From IMG/VR virus record IMGVR_UViG_3300047548_001236, positions 1 through 64,000 of that record: 64,000 nt of DNA; one strand, given 5' to 3'. Position numbers and translations under genes: made by a program. Below the pieces are notes generated by a model, which ran no database searches, was not told where the DNA came from, and was given only the letters and a program-made list of their open reading frames with translations. Shown piece by piece: positions 5,465-41,800 of the stretch (position 1 is its first letter; each line of letters begins with the position of its first letter).

Positions 5465-6126
5465 TCAACCTCTGGGAATAAACATTTGCTTACGAAGTAA
5501 TCGACGTCTTGCTCGTCAAGACCCAACGCTTTCATTGTTCTAGGCGTGTGGGGATTCTGCTTCTGAAAATAAGCGTAGCGGTTGTGCGCATACGAAGAAG
5601 GCATGTCGTCCTCCACGTTCATAATGTTTACATACCAACGGGTGTTGGCCGTCACTAGCGAGACCACATCCTCAATTTCCTTTTCTGTTTGAATGTTGCC
5701 AGCGGCAATCATACTACCAGAAAAAATCGCACGAGCCCAATCAGGCAACTCGCGGTTTTTCGACCAGTTGTATTTTGACGCAACATCGGAAAAGTATTTT
5801 AACGCAGGGTCATTCAAATTGACAGGAGAGAAGTCGTGAAACGCTCCTGTTACTTTTGTCGGGCCAGATATCACATCAAACCCGTATATAGGAGCTCCTG
5901 ACTGCAGGTTTGGGAATATACACACGTGCATCATCCACAGCTTCTTACTTTCGCGAGCGTCGACAACGTCAATGTGAGCGCGTCGAAACTTGTCCGACTT
6001 CCATGTCAGATTGACCCACCCAGGACGATTGAACCTATCCATCTGATCCTCTTGATACCTTTCAAGGGATCGATCAAAAATAGTTTCAATCTCCCTTTGG
6101 AGCTTTATTAGAGGATCCCACATCAT
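5461..6126 (-). CDS. pcyX: Ferredoxin-dependent bilin reductase (PcyX/PcyA-like)
   Basis: FRRAHI, MMHVCIFP, PIYGFD, GAFHDFSP, LPDWARAIFS, QKQNPHT motifs; adjacent to heme oxygenase. Confidence 0.8.
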   Translation of the reverse strand: MMWDPLIKLQREIETIFDRSLERYQEDQMDRFNRPGWVNLTWKSDKFRRAHIDVVDARESKKLWMMHVCIFPNLQSGAPIYGFDVISGPTKVTGAFHDFSPVNLNDPALKYFSDVASKYNWSKNRELPDWARAIFSGSMIAAGNIQTEKEIEDVVSLVTANTRWYVNIMNVEDDMPSSYAHNRYAYFQKQNPHTPRTMKALGLDEQDVDYFVSKCLFPEVE

Positions 6127-6670
6127 TGAATTCTTGCTCCAATTCTTCAAAAAACTCGTATATCATGTCGAAACAGCGGTTAGCCTCATCTGCCATCCCG
6201 TCGTGCAGTTTATCGCGGATTTTCTGTTTGAGAACGTCCACGTCTTCGTCAAACTGGTAGTGGAGTCCTGAACCAGGCACTAACTTACGAAGGATTTGAC
6301 CTCCAGAAAGATCGCCCATATGTCTGACGTAGATATGAGCCATCAATCTGTCAGGTTCTGACGAAATTGACCCTACATAGTCAATGTATCTATCAATGGA
6401 CTTGAGATGTTTAGGGATAGAGAACCCATGTTCTCTTTCAAGCTCAGTTAGATCTTTGGATATCTGATTCGATCTCTTGATGACCTCAATCCCATTCAAC
6501 AAACCTTTGTTTGTGGCTGCTGATTCAAGAACGTAATAGCACAACAGTTGGTTAGATAGATAGACGTAGTACTGGTAAGGAGTTATCTCCTTTTTGATCA
6601 TACGTCTGACAAAATTTGATCGCTCGGCTCTCTTGTGATTTTCAAGCGTCAGTTCTTTCAAATTATTCAT
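6086..6670 (-). CDS. hemO: Heme oxygenase
   Basis: LKELTLENHKRAE proximal His; AHIYVRHMGDLSGGQIL. Confidence 0.9.
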   Translation of the reverse strand: MNNLKELTLENHKRAERSNFVRRMIKKEITPYQYYVYLSNQLLCYYVLESAATNKGLLNGIEVIKRSNQISKDLTELEREHGFSIPKHLKSIDRYIDYVGSISSEPDRLMAHIYVRHMGDLSGGQILRKLVPGSGLHYQFDEDVDVLKQKIRDKLHDGMADEANRCFDMIYEFFEELEQEFNDVGSSNKAPKGD

Positions 6671-6879
6671 GGTTTGCATATGTTTGTGCTCGGTAATACC
6701 AAAGACGTGAGCTCTTTCGTGAACACAACAGCGTTGTTGGTTATCACTTTGCAAAGCTCGGTTTGTTTATCGACAAATTCGTGAAGGCCTTTACGGATCA
6801 CATCGTTGGTGACTGTTGCATCCACGAATTGTTTTTTCGACTGCTGAATATAGTCGATTGTCCAGTTAACGTTTAACAT
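6667..6879 (-). CDS. Hypothetical helical protein
   Basis: ORF starting MLNVNWTID with GGAG SD. Confidence 0.55.
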   Translation of the reverse strand: MLNVNWTIDYIQQSKKQFVDATVTNDVIRKGLHEFVDKQTELCKVITNNAVVFTKELTSLVLPSTNICKP

Positions 6880-6933: not shown

Positions 6934-7218
6934 TTACCTTGAAGATTTATCGTTTCTCACATAACGCGTGGCGTTTGTGGCGGAACTGCTATCTGATACG
7001 AAGTTGTATAGAGCAGATGCCTTGGCTACAAGATCTTCTGGAGTATACATCTTAGGTGCGTTATCGACCGCACCATTAAGTGCTCCAATGTCGACTTGTT
7101 TAGCAGCTTCGATCTGATGGTAGTACTTCTGAGCGTTGAGCTCAAGCTCTTTGTCCATCATCTCTTGAGCCATCTTGAGAACGTCAAGCCGAATCTCGAA
7201 AGGGTTCTTATTGGTCAT
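6934..7218 (-). CDS. Conserved hypothetical phage protein
   Basis: KNPFEIRLDVLKMA...A.ALYNFVS. Confidence 0.65.
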   Translation of the reverse strand: MTNKNPFEIRLDVLKMAQEMMDKELELNAQKYYHQIEAAKQVDIGALNGAVDNAPKMYTPEDLVAKASALYNFVSDSSSATNATRYVRNDKSSR

Positions 7219-8047
7219 CTTTCGTTACCGCCGATTGACGCTCTAGGTCAGTGAAGCCCATGGAAGCATATGTTGCAGATGTTTCCATTCCCGATGCATA
7301 AGCCGACTTCATACGAGTCGTCATAGCCGAAGCTGCACGGATCGTGTTTGCTGTTCCGTGTGTATCATACTGCATTGTGTTGTTGACGTTGAACCCAAGC
7401 GCGGAGCCAGCGTGGAACGCATTGATGTTAGCTCCGAGGAATATGAAGCCCCAGTTCTTGGCTTCCGCCTTTTCGACCATCGTTTTGATGTCATCATTAC
7501 GGAAAGTGCGAGATGAATTCTCTTCTCCGTCCGTGAGAACGGTGACGATCACCGATTCACGATCCGCTTTCTTAACCTTTGAAAGTTGCTCGTTGATTTT
7601 CATCATCACACCGCCCATTGCATCAAGCAGATTGGTGCCACCGCGAGGATTGTAGCTGTTGTGATCGAGCGGATTCACGTCTTTGACATTGACATGGTCA
7701 ATCGTGCATTTGACGGATGAACCATCAAACTTATATAGCGAGACAAACGTTTCGATTCCACTCTTTTCAGCGTCGACTTTTTGACCATCGAGGAATTCGT
7801 TGAATCCGGAAATGGTGTTGTCTCGGCAGCTCTGCATTGAGCTCGAGTCATCAAGAACAAAGATGATGTGGGAGGTTTTCTTGCCAGCCTTCTTGGGCTT
7901 GAACGCTTCCCCGAGAGTCGGCTTCGCTTGAACCGTCTGAGGAGCTTGTTGCACAACTGTGTGCGGGAGAATCGTAGTAGTTATATGAGGAGTTTGTACA
8001 ATTGACGGGTTGATCAAATTGTGGTAGGGGTAGTTTATATATGTCAT
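7208..8047 (-). CDS. von Willebrand factor A (MIDAS) domain protein
   Basis: FVLDDSSSM, GGTNLLDA, LTDGEENSS. Confidence 0.88.
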   Translation of the reverse strand: MTYINYPYHNLINPSIVQTPHITTTILPHTVVQQAPQTVQAKPTLGEAFKPKKAGKKTSHIIFVLDDSSSMQSCRDNTISGFNEFLDGQKVDAEKSGIETFVSLYKFDGSSVKCTIDHVNVKDVNPLDHNSYNPRGGTNLLDAMGGVMMKINEQLSKVKKADRESVIVTVLTDGEENSSRTFRNDDIKTMVEKAEAKNWGFIFLGANINAFHAGSALGFNVNNTMQYDTHGTANTIRAASAMTTRMKSAYASGMETSATYASMGFTDLERQSAVTKDDQ

Positions 8048-8108
8048 TTAGACCATAACCTTTCTGTGTTGTGTTGTGTGTTGTATTTTTCACAGAATCA
8101 TAATAAAC

Positions 8109-8168
8109 GTCACCGTTTCTGTTTCGAGGTAGGTGACCCACCCAAGAGAATCAGGCTGCGAGAGCCAT
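8109..8168 (-). pseudogene. Displaced 3' remnant of a tmRNA coding piece (...MALAA* plus pseudoknot)
   Basis: ATG GCT CTC GCA GCC TGA followed by GGGTGGGTCACCTACCTC...GGTGAC, which can form a pseudoknot. Confidence 0.6.
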
Positions 8169-8244
8169 GATATTATAAATAAGTATGGTTCGCGGATTTC
8201 GTGGTAGTCATCCCAACCATTCTAGAAACAATAGGAGTCCCAGC

Positions 8245-9036
8245 ATGTCTATTTATACACCTTATACCTATCTTATAGGATGGTCTTCAATAAGTAAATA
8301 TTATTATGGCGTCCGTTTTGCGAAAAACTGCCACCCAAGTGATTTGTGGGTGAAGTACTTCACCTCTTCCAAAACCGTAGCTGAATACCGTAAACTTTAC
8401 GGTGAGCCTGACGTGATTGAGGTTCGAAAAACATTCACAGATAAACACTCGGCAATTTTGTGGGAGGAGAGAGTGCTCCGAAAACTAGATATCAAGCACA
8501 ACGAAAAGATGCTTAATGCGAACGTTGCAGGCGCAATCGTGAAGAATCTTGATCACGCAAAAGGAAGACCGAGTAAACTCAGAGGCAGATATTGGACGGA
8601 GGAACAGAAAGCGAAGCTCAGAAAACCAAAATCAGTCCCTAGTCCGTTAAAGGGAAAACAATTGACAGATGAACATAAAGAGAAGCTCCGTGCTGCTAAA
8701 CGCGACTATAAACCGTGGAACGCTGGCAAAACTGGCCTACAGAGTCATTCGAGCGAAACAAAAGAAAAAATGCGGATGGCTAAGATCAAGTCAAAAGTCA
8801 TTATATTTTCAGAATGCCCTTGCTGTAAGGAAATAAAAGTTAAGCCAAATCAAACTTTCTGTAGCAATTCGTGTAGAGCGAAACACAACGCACAAAAATT
8901 ATCAGCTCAGGGAAAATTTGGATTTCAGAACAAGTCTAACCAAGATGCTGCGCAGTTAGCTAGAAGGCCCGTTGGGTTATACGGTGGAGCCCATACCGCA
9001 GACTCAATCAAGCAGCTAGGCGAACCTGTGGCTTGA
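8245..9036 (+). CDS. Homing endonuclease, GIY-YIG-like with NUMOD3 repeats
   Basis: YTYLIGW...YYYGVR, HSSETKEKMR repeats; late promoter TATAAATA at 8174-8181; antisense to its neighbours. Confidence 0.8.
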   Translation: MSIYTPYTYLIGWSSISKYYYGVRFAKNCHPSDLWVKYFTSSKTVAEYRKLYGEPDVIEVRKTFTDKHSAILWEERVLRKLDIKHNEKMLNANVAGAIVKNLDHAKGRPSKLRGRYWTEEQKAKLRKPKSVPSPLKGKQLTDEHKEKLRAAKRDYKPWNAGKTGLQSHSSETKEKMRMAKIKSKVIIFSECPCCKEIKVKPNQTFCSNSCRAKHNAQKLSAQGKFGFQNKSNQDAAQLARRPVGLYGGAHTADSIKQLGEPVA

Positions 9037-9336
9037 AATTATCGTTTGCAATGTTTGTTGCAGTTATTATTGTCTTCGCGGTAACGGCGCTTAGATCCCG
9101 GTAGCTCCATCCTGCCTAGTCCGCCTGTCGATCCTATTTCGAGCCCATCAAAGATACACTTGCTGATATCCTGTTAGATTTCAACTTGACCCACTACAGA
9201 TCAAAGTATCTAACACCGCTTCCGTTATCAGTCCGGTAGGTAGTTAACCTGTTTCCTTTGGCAAGTGTATCTATGGTGGACCCGCTGGGTACCGCCCCCA
9301 GGTCCAGAACGTGTTCAGTGAATATCATCACTACAA
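8962..9336 (-). ncRNA. ssrA: Circularly permuted (two-piece) tmRNA
   Basis: Acceptor piece ends GGGGGCGGTACCCAGCGGGTCCACCA (9274); intervening segment 9147-9273; coding piece starts GGGCTCGAAATAGGATCGAC (9146); tag ANDNFKPQVRLAA* (9008-9049); G3.U70 pair. Confidence 0.93.
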
Positions 9337-9339
9337 TTG

Positions 9340-9370
9340 TATTTATACTAGATCATGCTGAACAAGTCAA
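9340..9370 (-). promoter_or_regulatory. Overlapping sigma70-type (TTGACT-17-TATAAA) and T4 late (TATAAATA) promoter for tmRNA
   Basis: TTGACTTGTTCAGCATGATCTAGTATAAATA. Confidence 0.75.
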
Positions 9371-9749: not shown

Positions 9750-10343
9750 TCAGAATGCCATGCCGAGCTTGATGGCGACGTTGGTCTCGTCGGCAGCGGT
9801 GTCGAACGAACGGGTCACGCTCGGACGAACATAGAGACCGTCTTGGATGTTGTAGGTAGCACCGACTTCAACCAGACCACCTTGCTGAGCCCAGTCGTTG
9901 GTAGCGTCCCACGAATACGACACTTCACCAAATGCGCTCAGCTTGTCGTTGAAGCGGTACGATGCGCCGACCAGCGGAGTAGCCAGCCACACGCCATCGG
10001 TCGAACCCGATGCGACGGTATACGCAGCTTCCAGCTGACCATATGCAGTCACGGCATTGAACTCCTTGGACACGCCATAGGTAGCGCTGACCGTTAGATC
10101 TTCGGTGACGACACCATATTCAGCACCCAGGGTCAAGTCGGCAGTGGCACCGAGCACTTCGTGGGGCAGAACAGCGACGTCGACGCCAAGCGATGTTGCT
10201 TCACCAGCAACAGTGCCCAGGCTAAATGCAACGTTGTCACGATACAGTTCCAGCGTCGCGGTGTTGTTGTCAAAATCATCGGCCATAGCAGCAGTACCGA
10301 GAACAGCAACAGCGGCAGTAGCCAAAAGAACAGACTTCATCAT
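9750..10343 (-). CDS. Outer-membrane beta-barrel (porin-like) protein
   Basis: Signal peptide (...AAMA/DD), amphipathic beta strands, C-terminal Phe. Confidence 0.8.
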   Translation of the reverse strand: MMKSVLLATAAVAVLGTAAMADDFDNNTATLELYRDNVAFSLGTVAGEATSLGVDVAVLPHEVLGATADLTLGAEYGVVTEDLTVSATYGVSKEFNAVTAYGQLEAAYTVASGSTDGVWLATPLVGASYRFNDKLSAFGEVSYSWDATNDWAQQGGLVEVGATYNIQDGLYVRPSVTRSFDTAADETNVAIKLGMAF

Positions 10344-18569: not shown

Positions 18570-18674
18570 TGGTATCCCAGACAGGATTCGAACCTGCACC
18601 TACGTCGACTGATAACCAGCGGTAGGCCCTAGCTTTTTATGGCCCCGGTGTTTACCCACTTCCACCACTAGGAT
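18570..18674 (-). tRNA. Degenerate Leu-like tRNA with enlarged variable arm
   Basis: Acceptor, D and T arms and CCA intact; anticodon stem poorly paired. Confidence 0.5.
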
Positions 18675-18680
18675 ATTTTT

Positions 18681-18757
18681 TGGAGGTCGACCATGGACTT
18701 GAACCACGACCCCAGCTCTTGCAAGAGCTGTACATTAACCAATTTTGCTAATCGACC
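18681..18757 (-). tRNA. tRNA-Cys-like with 8-nt anticodon loop
   Basis: CAGCT-CTTGCAAG-AGCTG; U73; CCA. Confidence 0.7.
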
Positions 18758-21237: not shown

Positions 21238-21313
21238 TGGCGGCCCTGGTGGGACTCGAACCCACGACCATGAGTTTTAGAGGCTCTAGCTCTACCATCT
21301 GAGCTACAAGGCC
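21238..21313 (-). tRNA. Amber suppressor tRNA (anticodon CUA)
   Basis: Loop CT-CTA-AA, canonical D/T arms, G73, CCA; two mismatches in anticodon stem. Confidence 0.8.
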
Positions 21314-23399: not shown

Positions 23400-24355
23400 T
23401 CTACTTGCAACGGGGAGTACGAGGGGATTTGCACCAGGCCCCTGAACCTTCTCCTCTTTTCAGCTCCTCAGGGAAGGAGCCTACTTCTGCACCTTGCTTA
23501 CTCCGCTCTGGAAGTAGAATATTGTTGCGGGTGAGATTACCCCGTATTGTGAGCGCCTTTCCGATGTACCACATCCCTTGCGAGGAGTGTTGTCGGGTTA
23601 TCCACAAGAGTCTTTCGATCATCTTGTATCGCTCAGTGCTGCCGTTTTTGAGGTCTGGCTGTTGACCTGTCGCATGTTACTACTCGTCCGTCTTTCCTAC
23701 GCCTGCCTTGCGAGCAGCTCAGAGGCGCTAACCTCCTACGTGATCATTCTGAACAACTACTCTAGCCTTGCGAGCCTTCGTAGGCCTGATTATCTTTCGA
23801 CTCAGGCATTAAGCACCTTTCGTAACACACCGGAGCAGACTTTCGCTTTTTGAATCTATGTTGCTTTGAACCAAAATCAAACGCTAATTTAATAGCTGCG
23901 AACCTACTGAGAAGTGCTGCTCCAGTTGCTCCACACCTTGTTAGATGCAGAATACCACACTCCTCCTGTCTTTCTCCTTGCGGGATACTCAACGTCACTT
24001 CACGAATCCGGTGTGACCCTTCCTCGTTGATGATCCTACACCGCCCTTCTACGCGAATAGTCGGACTATGTAGACACCTGTTGGACTTTTCCATTCGTTA
24101 GTTTGGCTGAAAACTGTTTGGGCGCCAACCCTCTTACACCTCACCGATCGGCTCTGGTGCTATCCTTTCGGACAGTCTTCCTAACTTACTGGATACCTCC
24201 TAGCTTCTAAGGCTAGAAGGGACTTGCTTTCGGTTTAATCCGAGTCAAGTCTATCCCAGGCTTGTATGAATGGACCATTTTACTGGCGCAGGTATGTAGG
24301 AATCCCTGCTTTGGGTGTGTTACCACACTTACCCTGACGACGTCATACCGCCATT
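23400..24355 (-). ncRNA. Candidate large structured ncRNA (about 950 nt)
   Basis: No credible ORF, many hairpins, downstream of a promoter and boxA within the tRNA island. Confidence 0.45.
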
Positions 24356-27947: not shown

Positions 27948-28078
27948 GTGTATTCTCCGTATGTTTTGTATATGTGCGTATATTTTTGTATGAACAATGT
28001 GTAGGCACGATGTAGTAATGCGTTCACAACACTATTTATACACGGTTACGCATACGATACAGCACCTACGAAGAAAAA

Positions 28079-28177
28079 TATCCTGGTTGGACTCGAACCA
28101 ACGGCCTGCGCTTTATTCCCAGCGTTTGGGTCCTTCACCATGAGGGAGCACTGCTCTACCGACTGAGCTACAGGATG
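28079..28177 (-). ncRNA. tRNA-like RNA with 34-nt anticodon loop, no CCA
   Basis: Canonical D and T arms; two hairpins in the anticodon loop. Confidence 0.6.
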
Positions 28178-41674: not shown

Positions 41675-41800
41675 TGGCGACCCCGGTAGGACTCGAACCT
41701 ACAACCTACTGATTAGATCGTGCCTTAGAAGATTCGCACTTCACTGGGCTTCCATACCCTCAGGCCAAGTCAGTTGCTCTATCCATTGAGCTACGGAGTC
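41675..41800 (-). tRNA. tRNA-Arg(UCU) interrupted by a 50-nt insert in the anticodon
   Basis: Removing 41717-41766 restores a 76-nt cloverleaf with loop CTTCTAA. Confidence 0.85.

What the first reader, a model, noticed from the sequence alone, without database searches (positions are those of the whole stretch)
8109..9336. Homing endonuclease at the tmRNA 3' end, flanked by two alternative tag/pseudoknot tails
Seen: the intact tmRNA tag ends ...VRLAA* plus a pseudoknot and overlaps the HEG C-terminus in antisense. On the other side of the HEG lies an orphan ...MALAA* plus a different pseudoknot (8109-8168), cut off at the HEG late promoter. Inference: the HEG cassette invaded the tag region, supplied a replacement 3' tail and displaced the original.
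Basis: partly seen in the sequence, partly recalled or inferred. Interest (0 to 1): 0.8.

Follow-up and report, generated by a model that had tools for sequence, protein, structure and literature searches.

The report
Homing endonuclease that swaps phage tmRNA tail
A selfish endonuclease gene sits in the 3' end of a T4-like phage's two-piece tmRNA gene; it brings a working replacement tag-plus-pseudoknot tail, which its own coding end overlaps in antisense, and leaves the phage's original tail as an orphan on its far side, an arrangement found in eleven related phages.

Summary
On the minus strand lies an alpha-type permuted tmRNA (9335-8962; Rfam 90 and 74 bits). Its tag ends ...KPQVRLAA* and is followed by a pseudoknot. 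Both lie antisense inside the last 24 codons of an intact SegE-like GIY-YIG/NUMOD3 endonuclease gene (8245-9036, + strand).

Beyond the endonuclease's TATAAATA promoter lies an orphan MALAA* plus pseudoknot (8168-8109). A covariance model built only from endonuclease-free relatives scores the orphan at 62.7 bits (E 2e-14). It scores the attached tail at 15 bits.

Fourteen endonuclease-free relatives run straight from an ...ALAA tag and an orphan-type pseudoknot into the next gene. Ten other phages carry the same endonuclease, always between an attached tail and an orphan tail. In the one relative that shares near-identical endonuclease DNA (L220), identity is 95-100% from 8151 to about 9061 and 48-82% outside. 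This points to recent lateral transfer.

It is therefore a natural allele class that the endonuclease carries, not something it invented.

Closest analogues are fungal mitochondrial endonuclease ORFs that carry a foreign gene 3' end, and T4 Seg endonucleases. I rate it a new variant of a known kind. Cleavage and expression are untested.

The parts
9340..9370 (-). tmRNA promoter: TTGACT (9370-9365), 17-nt spacer, TATAAATA (9347-9340)
   Evidence: Read. TATAAATA is listed. A TATAAATA sits at the same place before the tmRNA of relatives.
9274..9335 (-). tmRNA acceptor piece (T arm, 3' acceptor strand, CCA at 9276-9274)
   Evidence: Rfam RF04321 and RF01849 alignments.
9147..9273 (-). Intervening segment of the permuted tmRNA gene, closed by a long stem; no ORF here
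   Evidence: In relatives this segment differs completely and sometimes holds an endonuclease ORF.
8962..9146 (-). tmRNA coding piece in use: 5' acceptor strand (G3:U70), PK1, tag ORF 9061/9049-9008 ending KPQVRLAA*, terminal pseudoknot 9000-8965 (S1 UGCGGU/ACCGUA, S2 GGGCUC/GGGCCU)
   Evidence: The tail is 87-95% identical among 8 endonuclease-bearing loci against 62-72% for the endonuclease body. S2 covaries within this tail class.
8245..9036 (+). Free-standing homing endonuclease gene: SegE-like GIY-YIG N-terminal domain, NUMOD3, Cys4 finger, conserved C-terminal tail. The last 24 codons (8965-9036) are antisense to the tmRNA tag end and pseudoknot.
8171..8244 (+). Endonuclease promoter (TATAAATA 8174-8181), conserved 5' leader, AGGAG ribosome-binding site
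   Evidence: The leader is conserved in 6 of 8 endonuclease-bearing loci.
8109..8170 (-). Orphan native tail: last 5 tag codons plus stop (8168-8151) and a complete pseudoknot (8143-8109; S2 GUCACC/GGUGAC). It is cut off from the tmRNA by the insertion.
   Evidence: Model from endonuclease-free tails: 62.7 bits, E 2e-14. Collinear with the tails of L205, L206 and L213. Empty-site contig in run X4.
8048..8108 (-). CA-rich spacer that in endonuclease-free relatives directly follows the tmRNA tail and precedes the VWA-domain gene (7208-8047)

Best explanation
The feature is a mobile cassette driven by a free-standing GIY-YIG (Seg-type) homing endonuclease. It has settled in the 3' module of a phage-encoded two-piece tmRNA gene.

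The tail module (tag end plus terminal pseudoknot) occurs in the phage population as two old allele classes. N has ...ALAA and loop GAAACAGAAC. P has ...VRLAA, S1 UGCGGU/ACCGUA and loop GUAUAACCYAAC.

The endonuclease gene lies convergent to the tmRNA, directly behind a P tail. Its reading frame has run into that tail, so the tail and the last 24 codons are the same DNA.

Inferred mechanism. The enzyme cuts N-type tmRNA genes in or near the tag ORF. The break is repaired from an endonuclease-bearing genome. The tmRNA body serves as the left homology arm and the N-type tail as the right arm. The result is: tmRNA body, P tail in use, endonuclease, promoter, then the recipient's own N tail as an orphan.

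Because the cassette brings a complete working tail, the tmRNA is not inactivated, and no intron or intein is needed. Because the cassette separates the tmRNA body from the N tail and puts a P tail in its place, the new allele should be immune to cutting.

What is shown: the anatomy, homology of both tails to tmRNA tails, the empty sites, recurrence in 11 loci, sharp high-identity islands, and covariation in both tails. What is inferred: endonuclease activity, its target, immunity of P alleles, use of the orphan as a homology arm, and expression and function of the tmRNA.
For: 1. Anatomy.

2. Empty N-type sites. Fourteen distinct loci have a single tail followed directly by spacer and next gene. 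Collinear alignments stop at window 9058 and resume at 8168. An empty-site contig sits in run X4.

3. Same architecture in 10 further loci with endonucleases 45-94% identical to the window's (L214, L216-L223, L230). The tail model gives two hits in each such locus and one in each endonuclease-free locus.

4. Orphans fall into at least 6 fully compensated S2 classes. Four of these are shared with endonuclease-free genomes; the other two (the L221 and L223 orphans) are so far unique to their loci. Attached tails are near-identical.

5. Mobility. Window against L220 is 95-100% identical from 8151 to about 9061. Identity is 79% in the orphan pseudoknot (a different S2 class), 48% in the spacer and 82% in PK1. 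L221 against L230 shares one 1191-bp island at 92.8% in otherwise unalignable DNA. Endonuclease-bearing loci are spread over three PK1 haplotypes, each shared with endonuclease-free N-type genomes and, for A and C, with endonuclease-free P-type genomes (L227 carries a variant of B).

6. The endonuclease looks intact. It is full length against its homologues. Invariant E74 and N91, near-invariant R24 and the Y-x-Y ... Y-Y-G motif fit GIY-YIG. Nearest Atlas clusters carry SegE_GIY-YIG. Phage homologues are annotated Seg-like or GIY-YIG.

7. Orphans decay. In L218 and L223 the tag end and S1 are gone. The L219 endonuclease is truncated. This fits the known gain, decay and loss cycle of such elements.

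8. The phage is T4-like: gp59 and the gp33 late co-activator lie next to the locus in relatives, and TATAAATA is 11-fold enriched.
Against: No cleavage, homing or expression data exist. The only run labelled RNA-seq among the four laid out (X6) looks like DNA.

P-type tails exist without the endonuclease in six phages. For the window itself, the direction of the founding event therefore cannot be proven: P tail plus endonuclease into an N genome, or endonuclease plus N fragment behind a P tail.

Standard double-strand-break repair would normally replace the recipient tail, not leave an orphan. At least the founding event therefore needs an illegitimate join.

Pfam's GIY-YIG models do not reach threshold on this protein, and the AlphaFold model was poor (pLDDT 57).

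In 9 of 11 loci the orphan pseudoknot is still intact. This could mean recent arrival, constant renewal by homing, or a function I have not recognised.
Confidence: 0.72

Rival explanations
1. Local tandem duplication. The tail was duplicated in place, the endonuclease landed between the copies, and the two copies then diverged. No foreign tail was imported.
For: The two tails are homologous, are direct repeats and flank the endonuclease.
Against: Attached tails of different phages are 87-95% identical to one another, while each orphan resembles the endonuclease-free N tails. The N-tail model scores the window's orphan at 62.7 bits and its attached tail at 15.2 bits. Both classes occur alone in endonuclease-free genomes. 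Sharp identity islands indicate transfer.
Confidence: 0.05
2. Reverse direction. The endonuclease lives natively behind P-type tmRNA genes in an ordinary intergenic position. The N-type orphan is a scrap from a recombination partner that travels with it. The target is then not the N-type tag but something else, for example the P-tail/spacer junction or a distant site.
For: P-type endonuclease-free genomes align with the window up to 8964-8966, exactly where the endonuclease-specific DNA starts. The first 18-20 nt of the orphan move with the cassette: they are 100% identical between the window and L220. Seg enzymes are known to cut at a distance from their gene (PMC2988022).
Against: Orphan pseudoknots differ between loci with nearly the same endonuclease. 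The window and L220 share 94% protein identity but have different S2 classes. L221 and L230 share a 92.8% identity island covering the endonuclease gene but also have different S2 classes. So the orphan body is local, not cargo. The break in homology to N-type genomes falls inside the tag at both ends.
Confidence: 0.15
3. Both tails are used. The orphan is kept because it has a role of its own, for example as a 5' leader or processing signal for the downstream VWA gene, or as an alternative tmRNA 3' end produced by read-through and processing.
For: In 9 of 11 loci the orphan pseudoknot keeps perfect S1 and S2 pairing. A conserved minus-strand TATAAATA at 8250-8257 could transcribe it together with the next gene.
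Against: The orphan has no tRNA-like part and no resume codon upstream. About 800 nt of antisense endonuclease sequence separate it from the tmRNA. Orphans are truncated in L218 and L223 and absent in L202. Renewal by homing explains intact orphans without requiring a function.
Confidence: 0.08

Closest known systems
Mobile endonuclease ORFs (mORFs) of fungal mitochondria that carry a foreign gene 3' end (Allomyces macrogynus atp6; Glomus atp6, atp9, cox2, nad3)
   Same: A free-standing endonuclease ORF is inserted in a gene together with a diverged replacement 3' end, which is the part used. The native 3' end stays downstream as a duplicate and resembles the allele of endonuclease-free relatives more than the inserted copy does (PMC3630166).
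   Different: Those cases involve protein genes in organelles. The endonuclease is on the same strand and often in frame, mostly LAGLIDADG. Here the host gene is a structured RNA (tmRNA) of a phage. The endonuclease is convergent and overlaps the imported tail in antisense. The imported module is a tag ORF plus a pseudoknot.
Free-standing Seg (GIY-YIG) endonucleases of T4-like phages, especially SegB in the T4 tRNA gene cluster
   Same: Same enzyme type and host type. They have their own middle or late promoter, home without an intron, and co-convert flanking DNA. SegB sits among, and targets, stable-RNA genes (PMC2988022).
   Different: T4 Seg genes lie between genes. They are not reported to carry a replacement part of the target gene, to leave a displaced copy, or to overlap the RNA gene.
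Genomic islands and prophages that integrate into the 3' end of tmRNA (ssrA) or tRNA genes
   Same: The incoming DNA supplies a new 3' end for the RNA gene, and the old 3' end stays as a repeat at the far side of the insert. tmRNA genes are a known favourite target (PMC11915505).
   Different: Those elements use tyrosine integrases and short identical att repeats in bacterial chromosomes. Here there is an endonuclease and homologous repair, in a virulent-type phage genome, and the repeats are only about 60% alike.
Group I introns with LAGLIDADG endonuclease genes in the T-loop of tmRNA genes
   Same: A homing endonuclease element lives inside a tmRNA gene without destroying it (PMC11915505).
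   Different: There the RNA is repaired by splicing. Here there is no intron, and function is kept by module replacement. A related locus, L221, has a LAGLIDADG ORF in the intervening segment instead.

Membership tests
Permuted (two-piece) alpha-type tmRNA | Match to the curated covariance models above the gathering score | tested here: met
   RF04321 scores 90.4 bits (cut-off 47). RF01849 scores 74 bits (cut-off 50).
Permuted (two-piece) alpha-type tmRNA | Acceptor piece ending in CCA placed before the coding piece; acceptor stem with G3:U70; tag ORF starting GCA and ending in a hydrophobic ..LAA | tested here: met
   Read: CCA at 9276-9274; GGGCUCG pairs with CGGGUCC including G3:U70; tag ...VRLAA*.
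Permuted (two-piece) alpha-type tmRNA | The RNA is made, processed into two pieces and active in trans-translation | not testable with these tools
   The four runs laid out gave contigs only, and the one labelled RNA-seq (X6) looks like DNA.
GIY-YIG (Seg-type) homing endonuclease | N-terminal GIY-(10-11 residues)-YIG motif with the conserved Arg, Glu and Asn | tested here: inconclusive
   YTY...YYG, R24, E74 and N91 are invariant or nearly so in 13 homologues. Nearest Atlas clusters carry PF19835 SegE_GIY-YIG, with scores 0.94-0.97. One homologue, P0070, has PF19835 on record. However, Pfam GIY-YIG models do not hit this protein, PDB gives no hit, and the AlphaFold model is too poor to compare.
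GIY-YIG (Seg-type) homing endonuclease | NUMOD3-type DNA-binding modules behind the catalytic domain | tested here: met
   PF07460 hits at 1.4e-8 in the window protein and in 13 of 13 homologues.
GIY-YIG (Seg-type) homing endonuclease | Site-specific cleavage of the endonuclease-free allele, followed by gene conversion | not testable with these tools
   Only indirect signs are available: empty sites, patchy distribution and sharp identity islands.
Endonuclease ORF carrying a replacement 3' gene end (mORF type) | Inserted 3' end diverged and in use; native 3' end displaced downstream and closest to endonuclease-free relatives | tested here: met
   Scores of 62.7 against 15.2 bits with the N-tail model. 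Collinearity breaks at 9058 and 8168. 'In use' is inferred from contiguity and conservation only.

The most novel reading that the evidence does not exclude
This is a dedicated 'tail-swapping' gene-drive system for a structured RNA. An endonuclease lineage has fused its own C-terminus to the antisense of one tmRNA tail allele (P). It converts the other allele (N) wherever the phages meet. In doing so it rewrites the degradation tag that the phage tmRNA adds to stalled host or phage proteins, from ...ALAA to a longer ...KPQVRLAA. The displaced tail is kept as the built-in homology arm. The N/P dimorphism of the tail and the endonuclease-free P alleles would then be footprints of the drive cycle (invasion, fixation, loss, immune allele). 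The 72-nt sense/antisense overlap would let the abundant tmRNA restrain endonuclease expression.
Probability: 0.3. Interest if true: 0.8.

Novelty: new variant of a known kind. Interest (0 to 1): 0.66.

Why it matters
It shows a third way for a homing endonuclease to live inside an essential structured RNA gene without an intron: it brings a spare part. The mRNA-like tail of two-piece tmRNA hangs free of the tRNA-like core, so it can be exchanged as a module.

The population data give a natural experiment on which tail features matter. S1 and S2 pairing and the ..LAA end are kept, while the loop and the middle of the tag are free to vary.

It gives a concrete, testable pair for mapping a new Seg-type specificity: N-type sites predicted to be cut, P-type sites predicted to be immune.

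It also warns annotators that a tmRNA-like fragment next to a phage tmRNA gene can be the native tail, with the one in use being imported.

More broadly, the tmRNA gene of these freshwater and wastewater T4-like phages attracts at least four endonuclease families. That makes it a good system for studying competition among selfish elements.

Tried and rejected
1. ARAGORN did not call the tmRNA. Rfam was needed.

2. No close relative was found in GenBank phages by DNA: one 147-nt hit only.

3. A PDB profile search of the endonuclease family gave nothing useful.

4. The AlphaFold2 model built on 13 sequences was poor (pLDDT 57, N-terminal domain below 50), so I did not run a fold search. The GIY-YIG assignment rests on motifs, Atlas neighbours and annotations.

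5. I first read the extra 12 nt before the tag (GCA ACA AAC AUU, 9061-9050) as a left remnant of the recipient's tag. I dropped this as the main reading because endonuclease-free P-type genomes (L227, L228) have the same ATNI prefix. It may be native to P-type tags or a scar of an older invasion.

6. A formal pair count with the count of structure pairs was not run. The S2 helix register differs by one base between tail classes in both alignments (A2, A4). I compared own-strand with cross-class helix lengths instead: own 5-7 bp in all but one of 27 tails (the L217 attached tail has 4), cross-class mostly 3-5.

7. The reads gave contigs only, so there is no evidence on RNA ends or on within-sample polymorphism beyond one empty-site contig.

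8. The single genome-contig hit (Flagellimonas, L233) matches the 24-nt pattern, but its flanks show no tmRNA context. I treated it as chance.

9. The literature search found no report of an endonuclease in or behind a phage tmRNA tail.
Full report
**What is in the window**

The minus strand between 9374 and 8962 carries a circularly permuted, alpha-proteobacterial-type tmRNA gene. Rfam RF04321 scores 90.4 bits and RF01849 scores 74 bits, both above their gathering scores. ARAGORN missed it.

Reading the strand, the gene has these parts:
- a TTGACT-17-TATAAATA promoter (9370-9340)
- the acceptor piece (9335-9274, ending CCA)
- a 127-nt intervening segment closed by a long stem
- the coding piece starting at G9146

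The 5' strand of the coding piece pairs with the acceptor 3' strand and includes G3:U70. After PK1 comes the tag frame. From the GCA at 9049 it reads ANDNFKPQVRLAA, with the stop at 9010-9008. A GCA 12 nt upstream (9061) sits at the distance from PK1 where relatives have their resume codon. That would give ATNI-ANDNFKPQVRLAA.

An H-type pseudoknot follows at 9000-8965, with S1 UGCGGU/ACCGUA and S2 GGGCUC/GGGCCU.

**The endonuclease**

On the plus strand, an ORF of 263 codons (8245-9036) has an AGGAG ribosome-binding site. A TATAAATA lies 64 nt upstream, at 8174-8181. The protein hits NUMOD3 (1.4e-8) and phrog_314 'homing endonuclease'.

Its N-terminal 110 residues carry YTY-x10-YYG, R24, E74 and N91. 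These are invariant or nearly so in 13 homologues. The nearest Atlas clusters carry SegE_GIY-YIG (scores 0.94-0.97). Phage homologues are annotated Seg-like or GIY-YIG. Pfam's own GIY-YIG models do not reach threshold, and an AlphaFold model was too poor to use. I therefore call it SegE-like GIY-YIG with moderate confidence.

The last 72 nt of the ORF (8965-9036) are the reverse complement of the tmRNA tag end and pseudoknot.

**The orphan**

Three bases beyond the endonuclease promoter, the minus strand reads ATG GCT CTC GCA GCC TGA (8168-8151). A second complete pseudoknot follows, ending at 8109 (S1 GGGU/ACCU, S2 GUCACC/GGUGAC, loop CGAAACAGAAAC). After it come a CA-rich spacer and a VWA-domain gene.

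I built a covariance model from the tails of 12 endonuclease-free relatives only and ran it over the whole window with filters off. It returned:
- the orphan at 62.7 bits (E 2e-14)
- the attached tail at 15.2 bits (E 0.02)
- nothing else better than E 2

The orphan is therefore real tmRNA-tail sequence of the common type. The tail in use is a diverged homologue.

**Relatives without the endonuclease**

I found relatives in two ways: an exact 35-mer from the tmRNA body and a protein scan with the neighbouring gene. Fourteen distinct loci have no endonuclease and a single tail of the orphan's kind, which I call N.

Their tags include ANENFAPVEMALAA, ANENFAPVAYALAA and ANDNFAPVAYALAA. After the tag come a pseudoknot with the conserved loop GAAACAGAAC, the CA-rich spacer and the next gene.

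Collinear alignments of such genomes with the window stop at 9058 and resume at 8168. About 23 nt of tag are replaced by about 889 nt. A wastewater contig (run X4) matches 8109-8170 at 57 of 62 positions and then continues into a normal tag, which fixes the right junction at 8170/8171.

**Relatives with the endonuclease**

Protein search found homologues from 94% down to about 45% identity. The genomic context of ten of them shows the same order every time: tmRNA body, attached tail, convergent endonuclease, TATTTATA promoter, orphan N-type tail, next gene. These loci are L214, L216, L217, L218, L219, L220, L221, L222, L223 and L230. The tail model gives two hits in each of these loci and one hit in each endonuclease-free locus.

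Mean pairwise identity across eight of these loci:

| Segment | Identity |
|---|---|
| Attached tail | 87-95% |
| Endonuclease body | 62-72% |
| Orphan | 53-56% |

The orphans fall into at least six S2 classes, each perfectly complementary:
- GUCACC/GGUGAC (and its variant GCCACC/GGUGGC)
- GGGCUC/GGGCCU
- GGUGGAA/UUCCACC
- GCAACUU/AAGUUGC
- GGUACU/AGUGCC
- CAGUUUG/CAAACUG

Four of these classes are shared with endonuclease-free genomes. The last two (the L221 and L223 orphans) are so far unique to their loci.

This covariation shows that the pseudoknot is a selected structure. It also shows that each orphan belongs to the local genome and not to the cassette.

Signs of decay fit the usual life cycle of such elements. 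Orphans are truncated in L218 and L223. The L219 endonuclease is truncated (199 residues against about 263).

**Evidence for movement**

The window and L220 share a 94%-identical endonuclease. Their DNA identity by segment:

| Segment | Identity |
|---|---|
| 8151 to about 9061 (orphan tag end, promoter, endonuclease, attached tail) | 95-100% |
| Orphan pseudoknot (a different S2 class) | 79% |
| Spacer | 48% |
| PK1 | 82% |
| Intervening segment | Unrelated |

L221 and L230 share a single 1191-bp island at 92.8% in otherwise barely alignable DNA.

Endonuclease-bearing loci are spread over three PK1 haplotypes of the tmRNA body. Each haplotype also contains endonuclease-free N-type genomes. 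Haplotypes A and C also contain endonuclease-free P-type genomes, and L227 carries a variant of B.

The right-hand crossover lies inside the orphan, between its stop codon and its pseudoknot. This is what one expects if the orphan serves as the right homology arm during repair.

**A correction to the simple story**

A scan for the attached-tail motif found six endonuclease-free phages whose only tail is of this second kind, which I call P:
- L224 (ANENFAPEVRLAA)
- L226 (ANTNAKPEVRLAA, followed by the usual spacer)
- L227 (the same 17-residue tag as the window)
- L228 (ATNIANDNFAPMDLRLAA)
- L225 and L232

S2 covaries inside the P class too (GGGCUC/GGGCC, GGGUUCC/GGACCC, UGAGCUC/GGGCUCA, UGAGUUC/GGACUCA). 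P is therefore a functional, natural allele class of the tail and not an invention of the endonuclease.

These genomes align with the window up to 8964-8966, where the endonuclease-specific DNA starts. They may be ancestors of the association, or products of endonuclease loss that keep an immune allele. I cannot tell which.

L223 is informative about the order of events. Its endonuclease (63% identical) lacks the C-terminal extension and stops just outside an N-like attached tail, with an orphan pseudoknot beyond. This suggests that carrying a tail came first and that the reading frame later ran into the P tail.

The peptide stretch just before the overlap (GFQNKSNQDAAQLARR) is conserved while its DNA varies at about 62-69% identity. 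That part is therefore under protein-level selection. Conservation of the last 24 residues can be explained by the RNA.

**How it most likely works**

The following is inferred. The enzyme cuts N-type tmRNA genes in or near the tag frame. Repair from a cassette-bearing genome uses the tmRNA body on one side and the N tail on the other. The recipient ends up with the P tail in use, the endonuclease, and its own N tail as an orphan.

The tmRNA stays functional because a whole tail module is supplied. This works because in two-piece tmRNA the tag and terminal pseudoknot hang free of the tRNA-like core.

The new allele should be immune, because the cassette now separates the tmRNA body from the N tail and the tail joined to the body is of the P type. 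The founding event needs one illegitimate join at the promoter-orphan border, since ordinary repair would have erased the recipient tail. Junctions differ somewhat between distant loci and are identical between close ones.

The convergent 72-nt overlap with an abundant RNA may dampen endonuclease expression. This is speculation.

**Comparison with known systems**

- The nearest parallel is the mobile endonuclease ORFs of fungal mitochondria. They insert into atp6, atp9, cox2 or nad3 with a foreign C-terminal part and leave the native one downstream (PMC3630166).
- Enzyme and host match the free-standing Seg endonucleases of T4-like phages. One of these, SegB, sits in and targets the tRNA cluster (PMC2988022).
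- Islands that integrate into tmRNA genes also supply a new 3' end, but they use integrases.
- tmRNA genes with group I introns carrying LAGLIDADG genes are known (PMC11915505).
- I found no report of an endonuclease replacing the tail of a tmRNA gene, in phages or elsewhere.

**The gene as a hotspot**

Several other endonucleases occupy the same gene in relatives:
- L200/L204: an HNH endonuclease at the same spot, with its stop codon inside the pseudoknot.
- L202: a different GIY-YIG endonuclease on the tmRNA strand, which has removed the pseudoknot altogether.
- L221: a LAGLIDADG ORF in the intervening segment.
- L220: another ORF in the intervening segment.

**Verdict**

This is a new variant of a known kind. 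Enzyme activity, target site, immunity and RNA ends remain to be tested.

Noticed in passing
window 23528-23965 (-): Full-length GOLLD RNA (194.9 bits, E 2e-53) lies in the middle of the phage's tRNA region.
   Followed up: no
window 11963-41951 (-): About 40 tRNA genes, all on one strand. One has a CUA anticodon (21238-21313, amber-suppressor-like). One is called with a four-base anticodon (18681-18757). Three Rfam tRNA hits of 100-123 nt were missed by ARAGORN (41678-41800, 28078-28177, 18573-18674); these may be interrupted genes.
   Followed up: no
L200 4674-5231 (-) and L204: An HNH endonuclease occupies the same spot behind the tmRNA tail, convergent, with its own TATAAATA. Its stop codon lies inside the 3' strand of pseudoknot S2, and there is no orphan tail. 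The tail there has a third S2 class, GGUGGGA/UCCCAUC.
   Followed up: partly
L202 80-868 (-): A different GIY-YIG (LEM-3-like) endonuclease lies on the same strand as the tmRNA. The tag is ANTNAKPEIRLAA*. The terminal pseudoknot is missing entirely and a simple hairpin stands in its place. This suggests a second invasion into a P-type allele and a tmRNA that may work without the pseudoknot.
   Followed up: partly
L221 3420-3842 (-); L220 1077-1451 (-): Endonuclease ORFs lie inside the intervening segment of the permuted tmRNA gene: a LAGLIDADG ORF in L221 and an unassigned ORF with an endonuclease-like C-terminus in L220. These are in addition to the tail cassette in the same gene.
   Followed up: partly
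window 8250-8257 (-): A second TATAAATA lies on the minus strand, overlapping the endonuclease's first codons. It is conserved in all cassette-bearing loci. It could act as a promoter reading towards the orphan and the VWA gene, compensating for the insertion.
   Followed up: no
L027 2593-2883 (+): A more distant phage tmRNA has an unusually long tag of about 33 codons, ending ALAA, and an N-type pseudoknot with S2 GCGACUU/AAGUCGC.
   Followed up: no
window 6086-6754 (-), 7208-8047 (-), 9750-10343 (-): The neighbours of the tmRNA are a heme-oxygenase-like gene, a VWA-domain gene and a small beta-barrel outer-membrane-protein-like gene. The gene that follows the tail differs between related phages (VWA, heme oxygenase or others).
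   Followed up: no
L227 910-976 (+): An endonuclease-free P-type tail whose 3' flank (GGGCCCGCUA...) looks like the flank of N-type tails. This is the junction that would result if the endonuclease were deleted by recombination between the attached and orphan pseudoknots of an L219-like locus.
   Followed up: partly
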